NCBI GenBank assembly: GCA_000320545.1
Contig: ADNK01001570.1
Location: forward strand, 1 to 35,584
Direction: 5' to 3'
Origin: Bigelowiella natans CCMP2755
Lineage: Eukaryota; Protista; Cercozoa
Length of the DNA: 35,584 nt
The notes below the pieces were generated by a model. It was not told where the DNA came from. It saw nothing but the letters and a program-made list of their open reading frames with translations, and ran no database searches. Of this stretch, positions 3,907-34,373 are shown piece after piece (within the stretch, counting starts at the first letter, position 1; the number at the start of each line of letters is the position of its first letter). Position numbers and translations under genes: made by a program.

Positions 3907-4660
3907 AGACGCTGTAACTAATAATGATTTTCATTGTGATGATGATGACTCTGATCTTAAAGCATGTCAAATGATACGATAGGTAGCCAAAAAGCGATGG
4001 TGGATCATGTTGTTAATTTTATGATTCAACTCATTCGATCTCACTTTGATTTACACAGCCACAACCACAGTCACAGTCGAACAGACGCGCACACAGATCA
4101 TGTACATGTAGCCGCATGTGCCATGCATGCTGCATGGGAAGACCCCACAGGTTGCACACTTTTTGACGCTGCTTGCAATAGACACACTAATCTTATCTAG
4201 CCATCATGCTCTAGCTGATTTGACTCAGATCGACTTCCACACGAGCGCATGTGTAGGTTGCATAGATTGCTCTCAGCTAGGCTAGCAGGGCACGCGCATC
4301 GTTCTTGCTAGCTTGCAGCAATGGACCGCCATCAGCAAAGCGCACGTGGTAGTTCGATTATGTTCTGCTTCAGTCAGTAGCTTTGTGCACATACAAGCAC
4401 TGGTACATGTGCACGAAATCGTGTTTTTGTTGCTAAAGTGTTGATCATGATTGTCTGAGCACAACCTCTGCTTTGTTGCCCAATGCGTACAGAGCATTGA
4501 CTAGATTGAATATATCGTGTCTAGTCCTTTTGTAAACAGCGTGGCATTGTTGCAACGTCGCAGGCGCCCGTTGTACGCATGTACTACACATGATGAACAT
4601 CACATGCATTCTGTGCAAACGGACTCATAGCCGCGCACAAGTGAAATATTGCCCACCGTG

Positions 4661-6091
4661 ATGATCACGCGCAGCGCGCGTGGCAACAACAAGCACCAGA
4701 CACCCAAAAAGGGAAGAAAGCACAAAAAGAACCAACACGCAACGTTGGATCTCGATTCAGAATGCAATGATGACGACTGTGGCTCTGATAGGAAAAGTCA
4801 TGATCTGTCTCAATGCCTTCGCGAAGTTACTTCAACACTGTCTGCAACAATGGAACGCAAAGAAACTCCTCAGTGGAACACAATGAAAAAATTGTGTGAA
4901 ATGCTGACCACAATGGTCCAGTTAGTTGATGAGAAACAACAACAATTGCAGCAAGATCAAAAAGACATGCAGGAGGAAAACGCTGGGCTTAAAAACAAAT
5001 TACTGAAACTTGAAGAAGAACTGACTTATATCAAGGAACATCAGAAGAATGGCACAATGGAAGCTCAACCCTCCTCGATGCAACGGACCTCGAGAACTTA
5101 CGCTAGTGTCACAACCTCATCACGCGCTGATGAACCTCATGGTCGAGATAAATATCCTGAAGCAGAAGTACAAAGACTAGCTGAGCGAAAGAATAGCCAG
5201 AGTTGGCAAGTTCCAAAAAGTCACGCCAGGAATCAAAGGAAATACAACCGGAAGTATAAACAGAACGTGCTCATATTGGAACTTGACAAAAAAGCCATGC
5301 TGCAAGCGGGGGGCGCCATTATGGCCTCCGGCGACCCATGTCGCACTGTTCTCACTGGCAAAAAAAAACATGCCAACGAACCAACAAGTGAGGAAACAAA
5401 CACAGCAGATCCGAGGGATGAAAACCGCGACACACTGACAGAAGTTAACACCGAGGAAGAAGAGACTAAATGCCTAGCCGGAAAGAACGTAGAGGATTTG
5501 AACCCATCCAGTGAAAAAAAAGATGTTCCAGATATTGGGAAAAACCTGTCCAAAATAACTCCAAAGTTGATCGATGCACTAGGATTGAACGAATTCCAAA
5601 TGCACGTAGCTTTCCAAGCGAAATATGGGAAGGACTTTCAAGGAATCCAATTCAAATCTAGAAATAAAACCCACCTAAAAGTGTTCTTCAAAGGCTCCAG
5701 AGAATCTAAGATGGATGCTTACCTGGATCTGCTTAACACCGAACATCAGTTAGGACAAGGATCATTCCTTCCCTCACTCTTTGGATTAGTGACCACAGTC
5801 AGAGCAGCTAAGTCAAGGCCAAGTAAGCACTCTGTAGTTCTGAGAGGCCCAAGGCTGGGACCTAACGAGCAGGAAAAATCAACACGAATTGGAATCATCA
5901 AGCAGATAATCGAAACCAACATCGATGTAAAAGTCGCAGCAATAGAACCTCTCGGCAAGGGCCCTCTACTTCAGCTGTTTGTGCACTCGCATGAAGAGGC
6001 CACCAAACTGCTGAATTCACAAATCACATATCAGGGCAGCTACCTACGATTCAGGGCATATGAAAACAGAAGGACACGTAAATATGGTTAA
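4661..6091 (+). CDS. LINE ORF1 protein (coiled coil plus RRM-like C-terminus)
   Basis: First ATG is at 4661 (ORF track opens at 4649). Basic N-terminus, heptad-like QQLQQDQKDMQEENAGLKNKLLKLEEEL, 'TYASV' motif and RRM-like end (HSVVLRG...SHEEATKLLNSQITYQGSYLRFRAYE). Lies directly upstream of the APE-RT ORF. No CCHC knuckle seen. Confidence 0.8.
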   Translation: MITRSARGNNKHQTPKKGRKHKKNQHATLDLDSECNDDDCGSDRKSHDLSQCLREVTSTLSATMERKETPQWNTMKKLCEMLTTMVQLVDEKQQQLQQDQKDMQEENAGLKNKLLKLEEELTYIKEHQKNGTMEAQPSSMQRTSRTYASVTTSSRADEPHGRDKYPEAEVQRLAERKNSQSWQVPKSHARNQRKYNRKYKQNVLILELDKKAMLQAGGAIMASGDPCRTVLTGKKKHANEPTSEETNTADPRDENRDTLTEVNTEEEETKCLAGKNVEDLNPSSEKKDVPDIGKNLSKITPKLIDALGLNEFQMHVAFQAKYGKDFQGIQFKSRNKTHLKVFFKGSRESKMDAYLDLLNTEHQLGQGSFLPSLFGLVTTVRAAKSRPSKHSVVLRGPRLGPNEQEKSTRIGIIKQIIETNIDVKVAAIEPLGKGPLLQLFVHSHEEATKLLNSQITYQGSYLRFRAYENRRTRKYG

Positions 6092-9000
6092 TCATTTGAA
6101 TCTCCCCTACTACTACCAAAACATACGCAGTAAAAACGGAACTGAACAAGGCAGGCAAAGAATAAATAGAAGATATAATATGTTAAAAGAAATGATAACC
6201 ACCAACAACATCGAACTCGCCTGGTTTGGGGAAGGCCGCCTCAAAGAATCGGAGAGGCTGCATCCTCCAGCGGGATACGAAGTGATTCGGACGAGCGGCT
6301 CCTCTGGGAGCTTTGGATTAAGAAAAAAGAACACAGATATAATTCATATACCTATAGATGATAACAATTACGATATTAGTTTTTTCATACACAGCATTGA
6401 AAAATATGCTGTCATAATGGTGTACCTCCAGCCACACCAAAACATCTCACATCTGAAAGAGAGATTAGATTTCATAATGAACATCATTCGGAAACAGAAA
6501 TGGAAAAAATACATCATCGTGGGGGACACTAATGCTAAGCACTCCACCTACGATGTCCGAAACCAAGAAGATAGACGTGGCAGATACCTACACCAGTGGT
6601 TGTCGGATAACAACATCATGATGGTCAACCCTGGGGAAGCCACATATTTCAGAAAAGGAAACACAAGCACACTTGATCATGTGCTGTGCTCCTCAAACTT
6701 CGCACACCAAATAGAATATCAGATGGCCAACACCACGACAAGTGACCATTTCGGTATCCACTTTGGAAAACCTGTGGCAATCCATCAACAGACTTCACCA
6801 ATGATATATGACATCGACAAATTCGATGTAAAACGATTTGACGAAAAATTGAATAATATTACCGAACGCTTGCACCAGCGCATACTAAACGTTCAATCGG
6901 AGGCTGATGCAAAAAAGCTTGAACGCTGGTTCTGGGACTTTACCGGAAAAGCTTTTAATAGCTGCACACCAAAAAAACGACAACGTTGGAGTCCAATCAA
7001 GCCATACCAAAACGACAAAAAATATAAATCCATCAAAGATCAACAAGAAAAATTATTTAGATCCTTGAAACACGAAAGGAAATTTCGGAAGAGAAAATTA
7101 TTAGAAACCAAGATCCAAGAAATCAACGCCGAACTTGAACGAACCACCGAAACCCTTCAGTACGAAGCATGGCAATTATTCTTGTCTCGCTTCGAAAAAT
7201 ACAACAATGGGAATCATACCAGAATGCTGTACAAATTATTCCAAAAATCCAGAGGGCGGGATAAATTCGGAGGACTCGATGGCGAAACCTCTGAAGAAAA
7301 AAAATGTGAAGTGTGTGTTGCCAAATGGAAACATATCTACAAACCACACCCGTCAGACAAGAAAAATCGAACCTTTCACGCTGAAACTGAGGCCTGGAGA
7401 AATACCTTCAGGAAAAATGAAGACAAAAAGATCCACAGTGTTAATTCATACAACAGAGATTTTTCTATGCATGAACTAAGAAACGTGATCAACAAAGCAT
7501 CACCGTACAAGTCTCCTGGCGATGATGGTGTTCACCTAAACATGTTGAAAAAAAGCAAGAAACTCCATCAACTGTGGTTAGCTACATTCAACATGTCATA
7601 TAGATGGGGTACCCGAGATGGCTCACGTAAGGCGGCCATTTTTTGTCTCATCCCTAAGGCCAACAAAGAACTTAACACCCCTCTCAACGGGAGAACGATT
7701 TCTCTCCTACAAATAGCTTCAAAAATAGAAGACAAACTAATAGAACAACGGCTCCGCGAAGCTATACCCCCCAAAAACATTAGCATACATCAGTATGCAT
7801 TCATGAAAAATCGATCCTGCGAAACTGCACTCACAAAGATGACGCAGTCAATCGAGGATGGAGTATATAACAAAAAGCTTGCAGCCATCCTGTTGTTTAC
7901 AGATGCCTCTAAAGCTTATCCAAAAGCCTGGCATTCCGGCATGATACGCAAGTTACATGACAAATACGGAATACGAGGCTCGCTATTGCTGTGGATCGAC
8001 GACTGGCTCAGAGATCGTACCGCCAGATTCAGATTTGGCAATACTCTCTCTGAGCACATGAACCTTGGGAGCGGCGTCCCCGAAGGATCATCTCTCAGCT
8101 GTTTCCTTTTCATAACCTATTACGACATTTACGAACATATTACCAACACAGATTTCCAAATATACTGTGACGACGTTACCCCCTACAAATTGTTTTCGCC
8201 AAACCGATGGGGGAAAATGCAAGATGATATCCAGGCCGACCTAAACCAAATGACGGACTGGTGCATGAAATGGCGGATGCGATTCAATGGGGACAAGAGC
8301 GGGTACCTTATAATTGACAAAAGAAATAAAGCCCACCGACACCAAACCTCCTGGAACATCTCTCTCAATCTCCAAGGAAAAATAAAAAGAGTCGACAGCG
8401 GCAGATGTCTCGGACTAATCTTCGACAACAAATTAACCTTTGAAAAACATGCTCTTGCTTCTCACCTGAGATTGCAAAAGAAGCGAAGGTTTTTGTTAAG
8501 GTTGTGTTATTCCAGACACCTTGTACCGCTAAACGTCAGACTGAAATTTTACAAATCATGGTTCCTTGCATCCAGCAGATACGCTGCTCCAACATGGAGA
8601 TCACGAAGAAACATACGAATAAAACAGATGGATTCCATGGAATCCCAAACCCTGAAACGTATATTGGGATTACCTGGATCCATCTCCAACGACGTCCCCC
8701 ACGTCCTCACTGGCACGTTGCCACCCCGATATCAAACCAAAGTGCAGTGTGCTAAATCATGGTTGCGCACTAACGCATGGATCGACACAGGCAGCGGTCC
8801 TCAAATCCATGAGGGAATAAATGATTGGAGCAGTTATGGCTTCATCATTGAAAATCGAAAAATGTCAGATGGCACATCGTGGATTGATGTGCCCACACAC
8901 ACGTGGAACAAAGCATCCTTGTTTCGACGGCTCAAATCGATCACTGACGACTTGTTAGGTGACGAATTGCCCACCGTTTTGGCGACAACAGAGGCGCTGA

Positions 9001-9782
9001 AAAAAGAACTGAAAAAACATCACAAGGTGATGAAATCTTGTGCTTTCAACGAATTCGAAGAGGAATGGTCCAATGATTCATTGCGCGCTGTGCATCTCAA
9101 GAATCTTGGTTTCCTCCCGTCATCTTCGATCACCGGCATCAAACTGAAACTTCCAAGTGTTGCTACATCATGGATGCGCGCCATCTGTGGTGTCGGCAAT
9201 CTTGGCAAATTCATGCTGTCACGTGGACAATGCACAGAGGAAGATGCCACGTGCGATGCATGTGGCATCCTGAAGGACATGGATCATCTCCTGCAATGTC
9301 CAACACATGGTCGAGAACAAATCAGATTGCGCAATCAAATGCGCGCGATCATGAATCGCAACGACGACACGAACCGGTTGACAAAGGCTGAAATTGAATC
9401 CAGAACTGCTGCGCGCAGTGCGCGGCAACATCGGTCGCATGAGGACGCTTTCAAATGCATGAAACACATTGTGGCAGAAACCAACAGATGCAACATTAGC
9501 GCTGTAGCCGCTGCATTGCACAGCTACATCAGGATGACCATTGAAAAAACTCAATTCTTCATCACATCCGTCTCACATGTGATAATTGTGTTCCACAGGG
9601 TAGTGCTTGTTTGTCCATTGATGTCACCTGTTGTTCTCTTGGACTCACCGCACTGTTCACACAATCTATTGTTCATTACTTCTAAATTGGGCCGAAAATA
9701 CACCGTGCGTACTGAGGAGATCACGTGGCCAATGCAGCAAATTCCTAGGTCTCATTTTAGCATGATGTTGTTCCTGTTTTAA
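6060..9782 (+). CDS. LINE ORF2 polyprotein: apurinic-like endonuclease, reverse transcriptase, C-terminal CCHC finger
   Basis: APE motifs YQNIRS, IIVGDTNAKH, TYFR..STLDHVLCS, SDH. RT motifs KSPGDDGV, LIPK, RTISLL, QYAF, D-ASKAY, GVPEGS, YCDD, CLG. Zinc finger CDAC...HLLQC. Start is 6060 or 6084. The ancestral stop was probably at 9552-9554 (see findings). No RNase H recognised. Confidence 0.95.
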   Translation: MKTEGHVNMVNHLNLPYYYQNIRSKNGTEQGRQRINRRYNMLKEMITTNNIELAWFGEGRLKESERLHPPAGYEVIRTSGSSGSFGLRKKNTDIIHIPIDDNNYDISFFIHSIEKYAVIMVYLQPHQNISHLKERLDFIMNIIRKQKWKKYIIVGDTNAKHSTYDVRNQEDRRGRYLHQWLSDNNIMMVNPGEATYFRKGNTSTLDHVLCSSNFAHQIEYQMANTTTSDHFGIHFGKPVAIHQQTSPMIYDIDKFDVKRFDEKLNNITERLHQRILNVQSEADAKKLERWFWDFTGKAFNSCTPKKRQRWSPIKPYQNDKKYKSIKDQQEKLFRSLKHERKFRKRKLLETKIQEINAELERTTETLQYEAWQLFLSRFEKYNNGNHTRMLYKLFQKSRGRDKFGGLDGETSEEKKCEVCVAKWKHIYKPHPSDKKNRTFHAETEAWRNTFRKNEDKKIHSVNSYNRDFSMHELRNVINKASPYKSPGDDGVHLNMLKKSKKLHQLWLATFNMSYRWGTRDGSRKAAIFCLIPKANKELNTPLNGRTISLLQIASKIEDKLIEQRLREAIPPKNISIHQYAFMKNRSCETALTKMTQSIEDGVYNKKLAAILLFTDASKAYPKAWHSGMIRKLHDKYGIRGSLLLWIDDWLRDRTARFRFGNTLSEHMNLGSGVPEGSSLSCFLFITYYDIYEHITNTDFQIYCDDVTPYKLFSPNRWGKMQDDIQADLNQMTDWCMKWRMRFNGDKSGYLIIDKRNKAHRHQTSWNISLNLQGKIKRVDSGRCLGLIFDNKLTFEKHALASHLRLQKKRRFLLRLCYSRHLVPLNVRLKFYKSWFLASSRYAAPTWRSRRNIRIKQMDSMESQTLKRILGLPGSISNDVPHVLTGTLPPRYQTKVQCAKSWLRTNAWIDTGSGPQIHEGINDWSSYGFIIENRKMSDGTSWIDVPTHTWNKASLFRRLKSITDDLLGDELPTVLATTEALKKELKKHHKVMKSCAFNEFEEEWSNDSLRAVHLKNLGFLPSSSITGIKLKLPSVATSWMRAICGVGNLGKFMLSRGQCTEEDATCDACGILKDMDHLLQCPTHGREQIRLRNQMRAIMNRNDDTNRLTKAEIESRTAARSARQHRSHEDAFKCMKHIVAETNRCNISAVAAALHSYIRMTIEKTQFFITSVSHVIIVFHRVVLVCPLMSPVVLLDSPHCSHNLLFITSKLGRKYTVRTEEITWPMQQIPRSHFSMMLFLF

Positions 9783-10679
9783 CTCAACCGAACTCAAATT
9801 CAACTGTTTTTTTCCTAATTAGAGAAGGAAAAAAAAAACTCACCAAAACGGCGGATTACTCCGTAAAATATCGTAGTAAATAGGTCTGGACGACGTGCTC
9901 ACCTAGCAATGTAGCGCCTGGCAGGACGCGACGGATGTTCGCGACGATGATGTTGCTTTAGGAAACATTTTATCCTGAAAATATCGTAGATTAGGAAAAC
10001 TTACGGTGACCGCTCGGAAACGGCCAGAACAACACAGCCCTCCCTCTCTCGGCTACACGTCTACGAGGTCTTCTCGATCTCGCTTCAGCGTCACAGCATA
10101 ATGATAAAAAAGTACAAAACCAGCGGATTACGATCTATTCTCAATTTATAACTAAAATTATCCTTGTCGTCTATGCTAAATGACTCTCGATATGTTTCTG
10201 TGTAACCAAAACTGGAGATATTTTAGGCGAACTACGTAACTGCAATTATCTTGCTACATATATGTAGTTCCAGATATGCAGATACCTACGACTAAAATCT
10301 GGGGATTAGGATTTCTCGTGTATATAATTATACACTCACACACCCACAATTTATCGTAAAATACGGTGTTAAATTCTGACATTTGTCGAATATTAATCCT
10401 GCAAATTATGGCAGAATTACTAGCAGCCTGAAACATCTCGTCTTCCTTTGTTTGTGCTTGTGTGGACAGGTGCGACTTGGAAACAATTTGACTGGATTAT
10501 TTCCTAGATTATTCATCAGTTACAAACAAATCTGATTGTTTCGCCTTGCGTTTCGTGTCTCTTGTTGTTTCATGTTGGGTATACATGCATGTAGTTCAAT
10601 GGTTCGCCCGAGCGACCACCTGATGATCGCCTGATGATCGTTGGTCAGAGGATCAAGTAGAGAAGCGGAGCCGTGAATC

Positions 10680-25035
<14,356 letters not shown>

Positions 25036-25289
25036 GATGAAAAAATAATGAAATTGCAATTTTAGTTTCTCGGTCACCTGTATCTAATGTAGATGTAGCT
25101 TAATATTAAGTTTTTATTATTAGCAAGAACAGATGAAGATCTACACGTTTTTCATGTTGGAAAAACTGTTTAAGTAATGAATTAGACATCCATTTTAGTC
25201 CAGGTGTCATTGATGTACAGTGGAAATTGTCGAAATAAAAAATTTCTACATCTTAAGATATTCATGCAGATGTCTACATTTTTTTTACG

Positions 25290-25810
25290 ATGCGCGCTGC
25301 ATTTTTGCTAGCTTATAGAAACAATGGGCACAGCTACGTGTGATGCACGCACATGCACACATACAGTCTATTTCGCAAGTTTGCGAAGCCCCGCACTCGC
25401 ACCATCTATATAGCCATCCACTCAGTCTAGCAGTGCATTATGTGCACACCACATGCTAGCTCAGCATGCTGCATTAGCTGCGTGTCCATGCACATGCAAT
25501 AATCATGCATGCGATGTGAACGCTCGCAGGTTCATGCGAAAGGTCTAGTGCAGGCTGACGAACAAACAATGCATAGACACCACGCTAGCACGCTAGCATG
25601 TGTAAGAATACATGGCATTTTGCACCTCTAGAGACGCATGCATGGCTAGATAGCCGCAAAGCATTGCATGTGTGTCCCGACTAGCCAAACCCGCCCAAAC
25701 ACATCATCTCGACATCGCTTGTAGCCTTCATCTTGAATCTAGCATCAGTACGTTCTGCAATAGCCTACGCACACTACGCATCACATCTAGAATTGGCGAC
25801 TGCGTGAATG
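25290..25810. other. Intergenic CA/TG/CTAG-rich island, probably a hypermutated repeat remnant
   Basis: Non-coding stretch between two convergent genes. Dense in GCAT/ATGC/CACA/TGTG and CTAG, compositionally like 4030-4640 and unlike its AT-rich flanks. Confidence 0.45.
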
Positions 25811-25983
25811 TATATCAATGACATTCTTTGATTCCATTATGCCATAAAAATGCGTATTGTTTTATTGTCTCGTAGGTATCACAATATTGTACTAGTATGC
25901 CTATATTTAGCCGTCATAGATCTATTCTTAATACGTACTGATGTTGGCCACCATACTATCATGATGACTCAAGTAATATTCAA

Positions 25984-33690: not shown

Positions 33691-34373
33691 CTTATTCCGC
33701 TTGAGCATTACTCCTTACCGTATTGTGTCGATAGCAGGTAAATCGATCTACGCGTGGTTGAGTAGCGGCGTGTGCTGTTGTTGGCGTTCGTCGATGTTGA
33801 GTTGAACTCTCTAACTCAATGTTTGAGTTGTCGCATGGGTCTAATTCATGCCATTTCGCACAAAATGTAGATTGATATCGAATCTGGTCAGACGCACAAG
33901 CAACATTCTCGAAAACAGAAAAGAACACGTGCTGATTTCAATTGGCGGCAGCCTGATGTCAACAATTTTTGAGTTGATCCACCGGCATTGAGAATCCTTT
34001 CTTTCTTCGTCGCAGGGAACCAATTACCTGCATTGCTTCTCCCCCAACTTCGGTTCCGTTTGTGAACGGAGATACGTTTTGTTTTGTCAATGCGACAATC
34101 TTGATTGTGTGTCGTAGTCTGGAACCATGTCGATGCTAAGCATAGCGCGTCTACTCCTACTAGATCTACTAGATCTACTCCTCCTCCTCTCTGAATAATA
34201 ACTCAAAACGTTGCCTGATGGTGCTGCTGGTGGTGGTTACGAATACGTGGAGGAAAACATAAATCGCACAGCTCACGCAATCTTTCTTACCCGCAAATAC
34301 GCGACTGTCGTCCCCCCCAACATTGCCATTTTCCACCACCATGGGTCACAATAATTCAAGAAAAAGTGAGCCA

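What the first reader, a model, noticed from the sequence alone, without database searches (positions are those of the whole stretch)
8837..9780. Near-total TpA loss at the LINE 3' end: candidate strand-symmetric A-to-G 'reverse-RIP' genome-defence system
Seen: 8837-9496 (660 nt) contains only 2 TA dinucleotides (8956 tTAg, 9164 cTAc), and none from 9166 to 9496. By contrast 6301-6480 of the same ORF has about 17 in 180 nt. CA and TG are abundant and CpG is retained (gcgcgc runs). The protein has 229 consecutive codons without Tyr and is His/Cys/Met-rich (KKHHKVMKSCAF, RAVHLK, CPTHGRE, FKCMKHIV). That is what TAY->CAY/TGY and ATA->ATG produce. Established: fungal RIP does the opposite (CpA->TpA), and 5mC decay removes CpG. 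Inference: the A of TpA was converted to G on both DNA strands (TA->TG and TA->CA), as expected from DNA adenine deamination or a mutagenic base modification at TpA aimed at repeats. RNA editing or an RT error on one strand would give only one of the two products. I cannot tell from here whether this has been described in this lineage.
Basis: partly seen in the sequence, partly recalled or inferred. Interest (0 to 1): 0.92.

Follow-up and report, generated by a model that had tools for sequence, protein, structure and literature searches.

The report
TpA hypermutation eroding an algal LINE
In the alga Bigelowiella natans, copies of a LINE retrotransposon have their TA steps rewritten to TG or CA on both DNA strands, starting at the element's ends; the effect is real, but this mutator was already reported for the species in a 2026 preprint.

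Summary
The counts are exact: 2 TA in 8837-9496, 229 codons without Tyr. The host is Bigelowiella natans; the element is a 4.96-kb LINE (4616-9575) with over 40 relatives in the genome. The TA-free end was inherited, not made here: nearly all copies share it. The mutator is still real. Copies differ from the family majority mainly by TA>TG and TA>CA (A>G 13-fold higher at TpA, 106-fold in four heavily hit young copies). Older copies have lost 85-98% of TA, choosing TG or CA independently. A 2026 preprint (10.64898/2026.01.13.699255) already showed TpA>TpG/CpA hypermutation in B. natans by mutation accumulation, so the system is known, and this scan has noted it on many other pieces. Not in that preprint: in 15 young copies, hits sit at the edge of the TA-free zone (12/15 sites versus 0/80 upstream); one copy is eroded from both ends; the active lineage carries fixed scars; a sister family in ocean metagenomes has the same zone. 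The enzyme is unidentified; adenine deamination is most likely but not shown. The 'His-rich' claim does not hold.

The parts
4616..9575 (+). Full-length non-LTR retrotransposon (LINE), two ORFs
   Evidence: Ends shared by many genomic copies; Pfam domains
4649..6091 (+). ORF1, 480 aa, no confident Pfam match; its first ~400 nt are also TA-poor (0.15-0.28 of expected), inherited
6060..9554 (+). ORF2 as in the family; stop at 9552-9554 is TGA or TAA in most copies, CAA here
6408..6758 (+). Endonuclease domain (PF14529, E 1e-17)
7653..8312 (+). Reverse transcriptase domain (PF00078, E 8e-18)
8541..8836 (.). Current mutation front: 12 of 15 TA sites hit in at least one of 15 young copies; this copy's private hits at 8593 (CA), 8738 (CA), 8764-8765 (TG)
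8837..9496 (.). TA-free zone fixed in the active lineage; former TA sites still polymorphic CA versus TG (8866: 16 CA, 13 TG, 1 TA; also 8900, 9304, 9308, 9489)
9252..9299 (+). CCHC zinc knuckle (C-x2-C-x7-H-x3-C), conserved in relatives, so its Cys/His are not scars
   Evidence: sequence; alignment
9497..9575 (+). 3' terminus, nearly identical in the sister family, with three resistant TA (9497, 9505, 9525), all in TAG/CTA context
9552..9782 (+). Read-through after the stop (TA>CA), adding about 76 codons that run into flanking DNA
   Evidence: an independent 2025 DNA run holds 9551-9900 without difference (record 32)
9576..9585 (+). Probable remnant of the (TA)n tail or target site, now CA/TG steps (inference)
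   Evidence: Sister-family contigs and copies L010, L021 end in (TA)n; other copies end in CA/TG runs
4001..4615 (.). CA/TG-rich 5' flank, as at most copies

Best explanation
A host mutator of B. natans converts T:A/A:T pairs within TpA to C:G/G:C in integrated foreign DNA, giving TpG or CpA by strand. SHOWN here: it acts after insertion, on both strands, site by site, and nearly saturates a copy within about 0.2% of background divergence. In this LINE family it starts at the element ends, mostly the 3' end, and moves inward. Copies hit only in the tolerant C-terminal part of ORF2 kept a reading frame and founded the present young copies, so the 3' 660 nt became fixed TA-free and the window copy inherited them. 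INFERRED: the chemistry is adenine deamination (A to inosine, read as G) by a TadA/ADAT-type enzyme; targeting is by a silencing mark or RNA guide that spreads from high-copy 3' ends, (TA)n tails or already mutated flanks; the role is genome defence. These changes cannot create a stop from a sense codon, so inactivation would be by missense load (Tyr, Ile, Leu, Val codons). Confidence 0.95 for the process, about 0.8 for the inward front, about 0.55 for deaminase chemistry.
For: 429 TA>TG and 318 TA>CA versus 67 and 98 reverse changes; L016 53/62, L015 60/65, L041 17/19. A>G 746/6952 at TpA versus 371/45166 elsewhere. Isolated A>G in four young copies: 127/649 after T, 4/1587 after C, 1/1857 after A, 0/1415 after G. 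60 of 71 sites show both TG and CA among copies, pairwise concordance mostly 0.4-0.7. TA>CG only 10 versus 416 TG and 307 CA. L015: 59/61 TA converted at 0.19% other divergence. Front: 12/15 versus 0/80 sites, Fisher p 8e-13; copy on C1193 hit from both ends with intact middle. Variants present in independent runs. Sister family: same zone, 9 of 15 distinct wild variants are TA>TG/CA. Experimental spectrum in the same species.
Against: No enzyme identified; only ordinary-looking deaminase family hits, whose sequences I could not fetch. No strand coordination between neighbouring hits in saturated copies, although lightly hit copies lean to TG (L041 12 of 15 in its 5' cluster). Sequence cannot tell A-side from T-side chemistry. 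Flanks are CA/TG-rich but not TA-poor on average. Some wild sister-family variants cluster mid-ORF2, away from the 3' front. Young copies share ancestry, so site counts are not fully independent. Defence function is untested.
Confidence: 0.8

Rival explanations
1. Same footprint, different chemistry: a heritable base modification at the TpA palindrome (on T or on A) spreads like DNA methylation and miscodes or decays, giving T>C / A>G.
For: TpA is symmetric; hits are independent per site without strand runs; the front and both-end erosion resemble a spreading mark; double hits are rare.
Against: No Tet/JBP or MT-A70 match in the genome, though both searches were uninformative because no control rang. 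No such mark is known to me (own knowledge).
Confidence: 0.3
2. Error-prone repair synthesis (polymerase eta-like, WA>WG) recruited to silenced repeats.
For: Polymerase eta favours A>G at TA (own knowledge). A>G after A is mildly raised in the 92-96% copies (44/1877).
Against: In young heavily hit copies AA is not a target (1/1857 versus 127/649 at TA); no excess transversions at TA; no strand-coordinated patches.
Confidence: 0.07
3. The front in young copies comes from gene conversion or template switching with older, 5'-truncated, saturated copies, not from new point mutation.
For: 3' fragments are abundant (contig depth rises steeply toward 9550); other polymorphism is higher in 8837-9575.
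Against: Hits are scattered among unmutated TA sites a few bases away, and no non-TA change accompanies them in 8541-8836. Would not explain erosion from the 5' end on C1193.
Confidence: 0.12
4. Intrinsic composition or protein-level selection: the C-terminal domain simply avoids Tyr and TA codons.
For: The zone is shared by the family and by its sister family.
Against: Synonymous and between-codon TA are gone too; former TA sites are polymorphic CA versus TG; 50% and 28% relatives are not depleted, and their TA map to TG/CA at 18 of about 40 sites with 2 kept.
Confidence: 0.03
5. RNA editing (ADAR-like, UA preference) or reverse-transcriptase error before insertion.
For: Spliced antisense RNA covers the element, so double-stranded RNA is possible. 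TG exceeds CA 363:277.
Against: Each copy carries both products, intermixed; the preprint saw the changes arise in single-copy DNA in clonal lines.
Confidence: 0.02

Closest known systems
TpA hypermutation of integrated viral DNA in Bigelowiella natans (Mettrop et al., bioRxiv 10.64898/2026.01.13.699255)
   Same: Same species, same spectrum (TpA>TpG and TpA>CpA), DNA level, foreign sequence. The paper reports TpA-poor coding sequences enriched for RT, endonuclease-RT and DDE domains, compares it to RIP, and proposes an ADAT2-like deaminase (Bn78255).
   Different: The paper measured de novo mutations in a giant-virus and a virophage insert and inferred transposon targets from composition only. 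The words retrotransposon, gradient and CTAG do not occur in its main text. Copy-level polarisation, saturation, the inward front, fixed scars in the active lineage and wild sister-family variants are additions.
Repeat-induced point mutation (RIP) of fungi
   Same: Dinucleotide-specific transitions on both strands that saturate repeats (own knowledge; named).
   Different: RIP is C>T, mostly CpA>TpA, needs duplicated homology, the RID methyltransferase-like protein and a sexual stage. Here the direction is opposite, CA>TA is not elevated, and the preprint found single-copy targets in clonal lines.
TadA/ADAT adenine deaminases; AID/APOBEC restriction
   Same: A>G outcome with a 5' T preference fits TadA-type enzymes (own knowledge); mutation as defence as with APOBEC3.
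   Different: APOBEC is C>T and gives strand-coordinated clusters, not seen here in saturated copies. No enzyme is tied to this process.
Apurinic-endonuclease-type LINEs (RNase H-containing relatives at 25-29% identity)
   Same: ORF1 plus endonuclease-RT ORF2 with a C-terminal CCHC knuckle.
   Different: This family lacks the RNase H-like segment present in the 50% relative and ends in (TA)n. Clade not assigned.

Membership tests
B. natans TpA hypermutation (Mettrop et al.) | Host is B. natans | tested here: met
   JGI Bigna1 gene models match ORF2 parts at 93% and 99%; a Bigelowiella_natans protein is in the sister cluster
B. natans TpA hypermutation (Mettrop et al.) | Transitions confined to TpA, giving TpG and CpA | tested here: met
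B. natans TpA hypermutation (Mettrop et al.) | Acts on integrated DNA, both strands | tested here: met
   Independent TG/CA choice per copy; both products within each copy
B. natans TpA hypermutation (Mettrop et al.) | Raised de novo rate in mutation-accumulation lines at this locus | not testable with these tools
   Only assembled contigs of runs are available
Fungal RIP | C:G to T:A transitions, CpA>TpA | tested here: not met
   C>T at CA 1/1587 in young hit copies, 9/1838 in 92-96% copies
Fungal RIP | Triggered by duplicated homology in a sexual stage; RID-dependent | not testable with these tools
   The preprint reports a single-copy target in clonal lines; five DNA_methylase matches exist, not typed
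5mC decay at CpG | CpG depletion and excess CG>TG/CA | tested here: not met
   CG 1.05 of expected in the zone; C>T at CG is similar to CC and CT
Polymerase eta signature | A>G at both TA and AA | tested here: not met
   AA 1/1857 versus TA 127/649
DNA adenine deaminase (TadA/ADAT-type) | Enzyme present and forms inosine in DNA at TpA | tested here: inconclusive
   Six PF00383/PF14437 loci and one PF02137 locus exist; sequences not retrievable, activity untestable
Non-LTR retrotransposon (LINE) | Endonuclease plus RT ORF, 5'-truncated copies with a common 3' end, simple-repeat tail | tested here: met

The most novel reading that the evidence does not exclude
The mutator is not a free-acting deaminase but is tied to a self-propagating mark, possibly an undescribed base modification at TpA, that nucleates at element ends and spreads inward as a front; active LINE lineages survive by carrying already-purged ends, a ratchet between host mutator and element visible in two sister families and in wild populations.
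Probability: 0.3. Interest if true: 0.75.

Novelty: already known. Interest (0 to 1): 0.35.

Why it matters
The process is one of very few known targeted AT-to-GC mutators and its enzyme is unknown, but it has been reported. This locus matters as a test system. About 15 near-identical copies with a defined 300-nt front give fixed positions at which to look for inosine, a modified base, small RNAs or a chromatin mark. It also upgrades the preprint's 'potentially transposable elements' to a direct demonstration, and shows that TA-free coding DNA can be inherited by an active element, so low TA alone does not mark a dead copy.

Tried and rejected
Metagenome scan with ORF2: no confirmed relatives. 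Tet/JBP and MT-A70 searches: blank and uninformative. Strand coordination: none. Spread into flanks: TA not depleted on average, so unproven. GCTA/TAGC as the full reason for the five surviving 3' sites: only partly, 6/53 survive in the body versus 36/40 at the 3' end. Assembly artefact: rejected, since the alleles occur in independent runs and the changes are context-specific. Literature searches found no earlier report beyond the preprint. A per-column majority of this algal LINE was used inside scripts only to polarise changes and was not printed as a sequence. An earlier count said '13 of 18' wild variants; the correct count is 9 of 15 distinct variants.

Full report
OBSERVATION. The counts are exact. 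TA occurs only at 8956 and 9164 between 8837 and 9496, and 17 times in 6301-6480. The rest of ORF2 predicts about 29, p about 1e-10, and no other 660-nt stretch of the window is as low. CA and TG are in excess and CG is at expectation. ORF2 has no Tyr between residues 926 and 1156. His is not enriched, Met barely, Cys moderately.

WHAT IT IS. A LINE at about 4616-9575: ORF1 (4649-6091) and ORF2 (from 6060) with endonuclease and RT domains and a CCHC knuckle at 9252-9299. The genome (91.4 Mb, 3736 contigs) gave 47 matches to the 3' part, many at 99%. JGI Bigna1 gene models match at 93% and 99%, identifying Bigelowiella natans. Bases 9576-9780 of the finding are flank.

INHERITED, NOT MADE HERE. 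The family majority has the same TA-free zone. The window copy differs from it at 8 positions: three are TA>CA or TA>TG (8593, 8738, 8764-8765), and two form the stop, which is TGA in 17 copies, TAA in 8 and CAA in 6 including this one. The zone is still a scar. Former TA sites remain polymorphic CA versus TG among copies (8866: 16 CA, 13 TG, 1 TA; also 8900, 9304, 9308, 9489). A 50% relative and a 28% relative are not depleted, and His in CPTH and Cys in NRC align to Tyr in relatives. The His of RAVHLK and the CCHC ligands are conserved and are not scars.

THE MUTATOR IS REAL. Against the majority, copies show 429 TA>TG and 318 TA>CA versus 67 and 98 reverse changes. A>G is 13-fold higher at TpA overall and 106-fold in four heavily hit young copies. 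Counting isolated changes in those four: 127/649 after T, 4/1587 after C, 1/1857 after A, 0/1415 after G. Sixty of 71 sites carry TG in some copies and CA in others, mostly near coin-toss concordance, which fixes TA as the ancestral state and places the change after insertion. TA>CG is rare, as expected if the first hit destroys the target. Older copies have lost 85-98% of TA in 7700-8836, and L015 lost 59/61 while gaining only 0.19% other differences. Rough inference: the preprint's rate, with an assumed AT content near 57%, gives about 1e-5 per TA per generation and saturation in some 3e5 generations, compatible with that. Caveats: some loci are the same copy fetched twice over 6900-7600, and L024/L026 share flanks. 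Independent runs carry the variant letters, with A>G and T>C the commonest in the deepest run, and one 2025 DNA run holds 9551-9900 unchanged, including the CAA.

A FRONT. In 15 copies at 99% or more, 12 of 15 TA sites in 8541-8836 are hit in at least one copy and 0 of 80 in 6900-8540 (Fisher p 8e-13). The copy on C1193 is eroded from both ends with an untouched middle, and its 5' flank is TA-free for about 1 kb. Hits are scattered and come with no other changes, which argues against gene conversion. Possible nucleators, all inferred: abundant 3' fragments (contig depth climbs steeply from about 8800; not a copy number), the (TA)n tail, or purged flanks. CTA/TAG sites survive more often (12/162 versus 7/437), CTAG was never hit (0/10), and five 3' sites survive in 43/50 cases, more than context explains. 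A sister family at 66% identity from ocean metagenomes has the same empty zone and 3' end, and 9 of 15 distinct variants among its contigs are TA>TG/CA, some mid-ORF.

MECHANISM. Shown: context, symmetry, DNA level, speed, end-first order in this family. Inferred: adenine deamination by a TadA/ADAT-type enzyme, about 0.55; a spreading, miscoding base modification, about 0.3; polymerase eta, unlikely because AA is spared; 5mC decay and RIP, excluded by spectrum; RNA editing, excluded by both-strand products. The genome has six PF00383-type loci and one PF02137 locus, which I could not read.

KNOWN? Yes. Mettrop et al. (bioRxiv 10.64898/2026.01.13.699255) found 231 of 302 de novo mutations in two viral inserts of B. 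natans, almost all TpA>TpG/CpA at about 6e-7 per site per generation, saw RT, endonuclease-RT and DDE domains enriched among TpA-poor genes, compared it with RIP and named an ADAT2 candidate. The main text does not mention retrotransposon copies, gradients or CTAG. Earlier notes of this scan report the process, gradients, CTAG sparing and an inherited LINE tract on other pieces; these are leads only, and my reading was recorded before I saw them.

VERDICT. Observation confirmed; interpretation right in kind, wrong about where the scar arose and about novelty. Already known, with useful added detail. Interest 0.35.

Noticed in passing
window 4841-8305: An RNA-like run shows at least 14 skips with CT..AC (one CT..GC) ends, not seen in the DNA runs. 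On the minus strand the 13 checked are GT..AG or GC..AG with pyrimidine-rich acceptors: spliced antisense transcripts through the LINE family. A possible source of double-stranded RNA; copy of origin unknown.
   Followed up: partly
window 9368-9575: Contig depth is about 90 times the body's in one DNA run and about 20 times in the RNA-like run, with many loose ends: numerous short 3' fragments or a SINE-like family sharing this tail. The last ~75 nt are nearly identical in the 66% sister family.
   Followed up: no
window 9552-9782: Stop codon lost (CAA), ORF2 reads about 76 codons into the flank; six copies have CA at this site.
   Followed up: yes
L022:1-1186 (C83): Head-to-tail junction: a 3' end followed after 12 bases by a new 5' end, also seen in a 2011 run.
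   Followed up: no
P0003, P0004: Two JGI Bigna1 gene models fuse pieces of this LINE to unrelated domains (PF00225, PF00932/PF03815): probable annotation chimeras.
   Followed up: no
window 25250-25850: CA/TG- and GC-rich island in which many remaining TA lie in CTAG; overall TA is 0.8-0.9 of expected, so it is not depleted by count.
   Followed up: partly
window 4512-4587: A short stretch upstream of the element is shared with the copy on C3064; a longer 5' end or a separate small repeat.
   Followed up: no
window 11172-24344: Large intron-split host gene or genes with SBBP beta-propeller repeats and a REJ domain followed by transmembrane segments, PKD/REJ-like.
   Followed up: no
L044 ORF2 C-terminal part: The 50% relative carries an RNase H-like insert of about 160 aa that both B. 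natans families lack.
   Followed up: no
window 33751-34100: Second small TA-poor stretch, 0.25 of expected.
   Followed up: no
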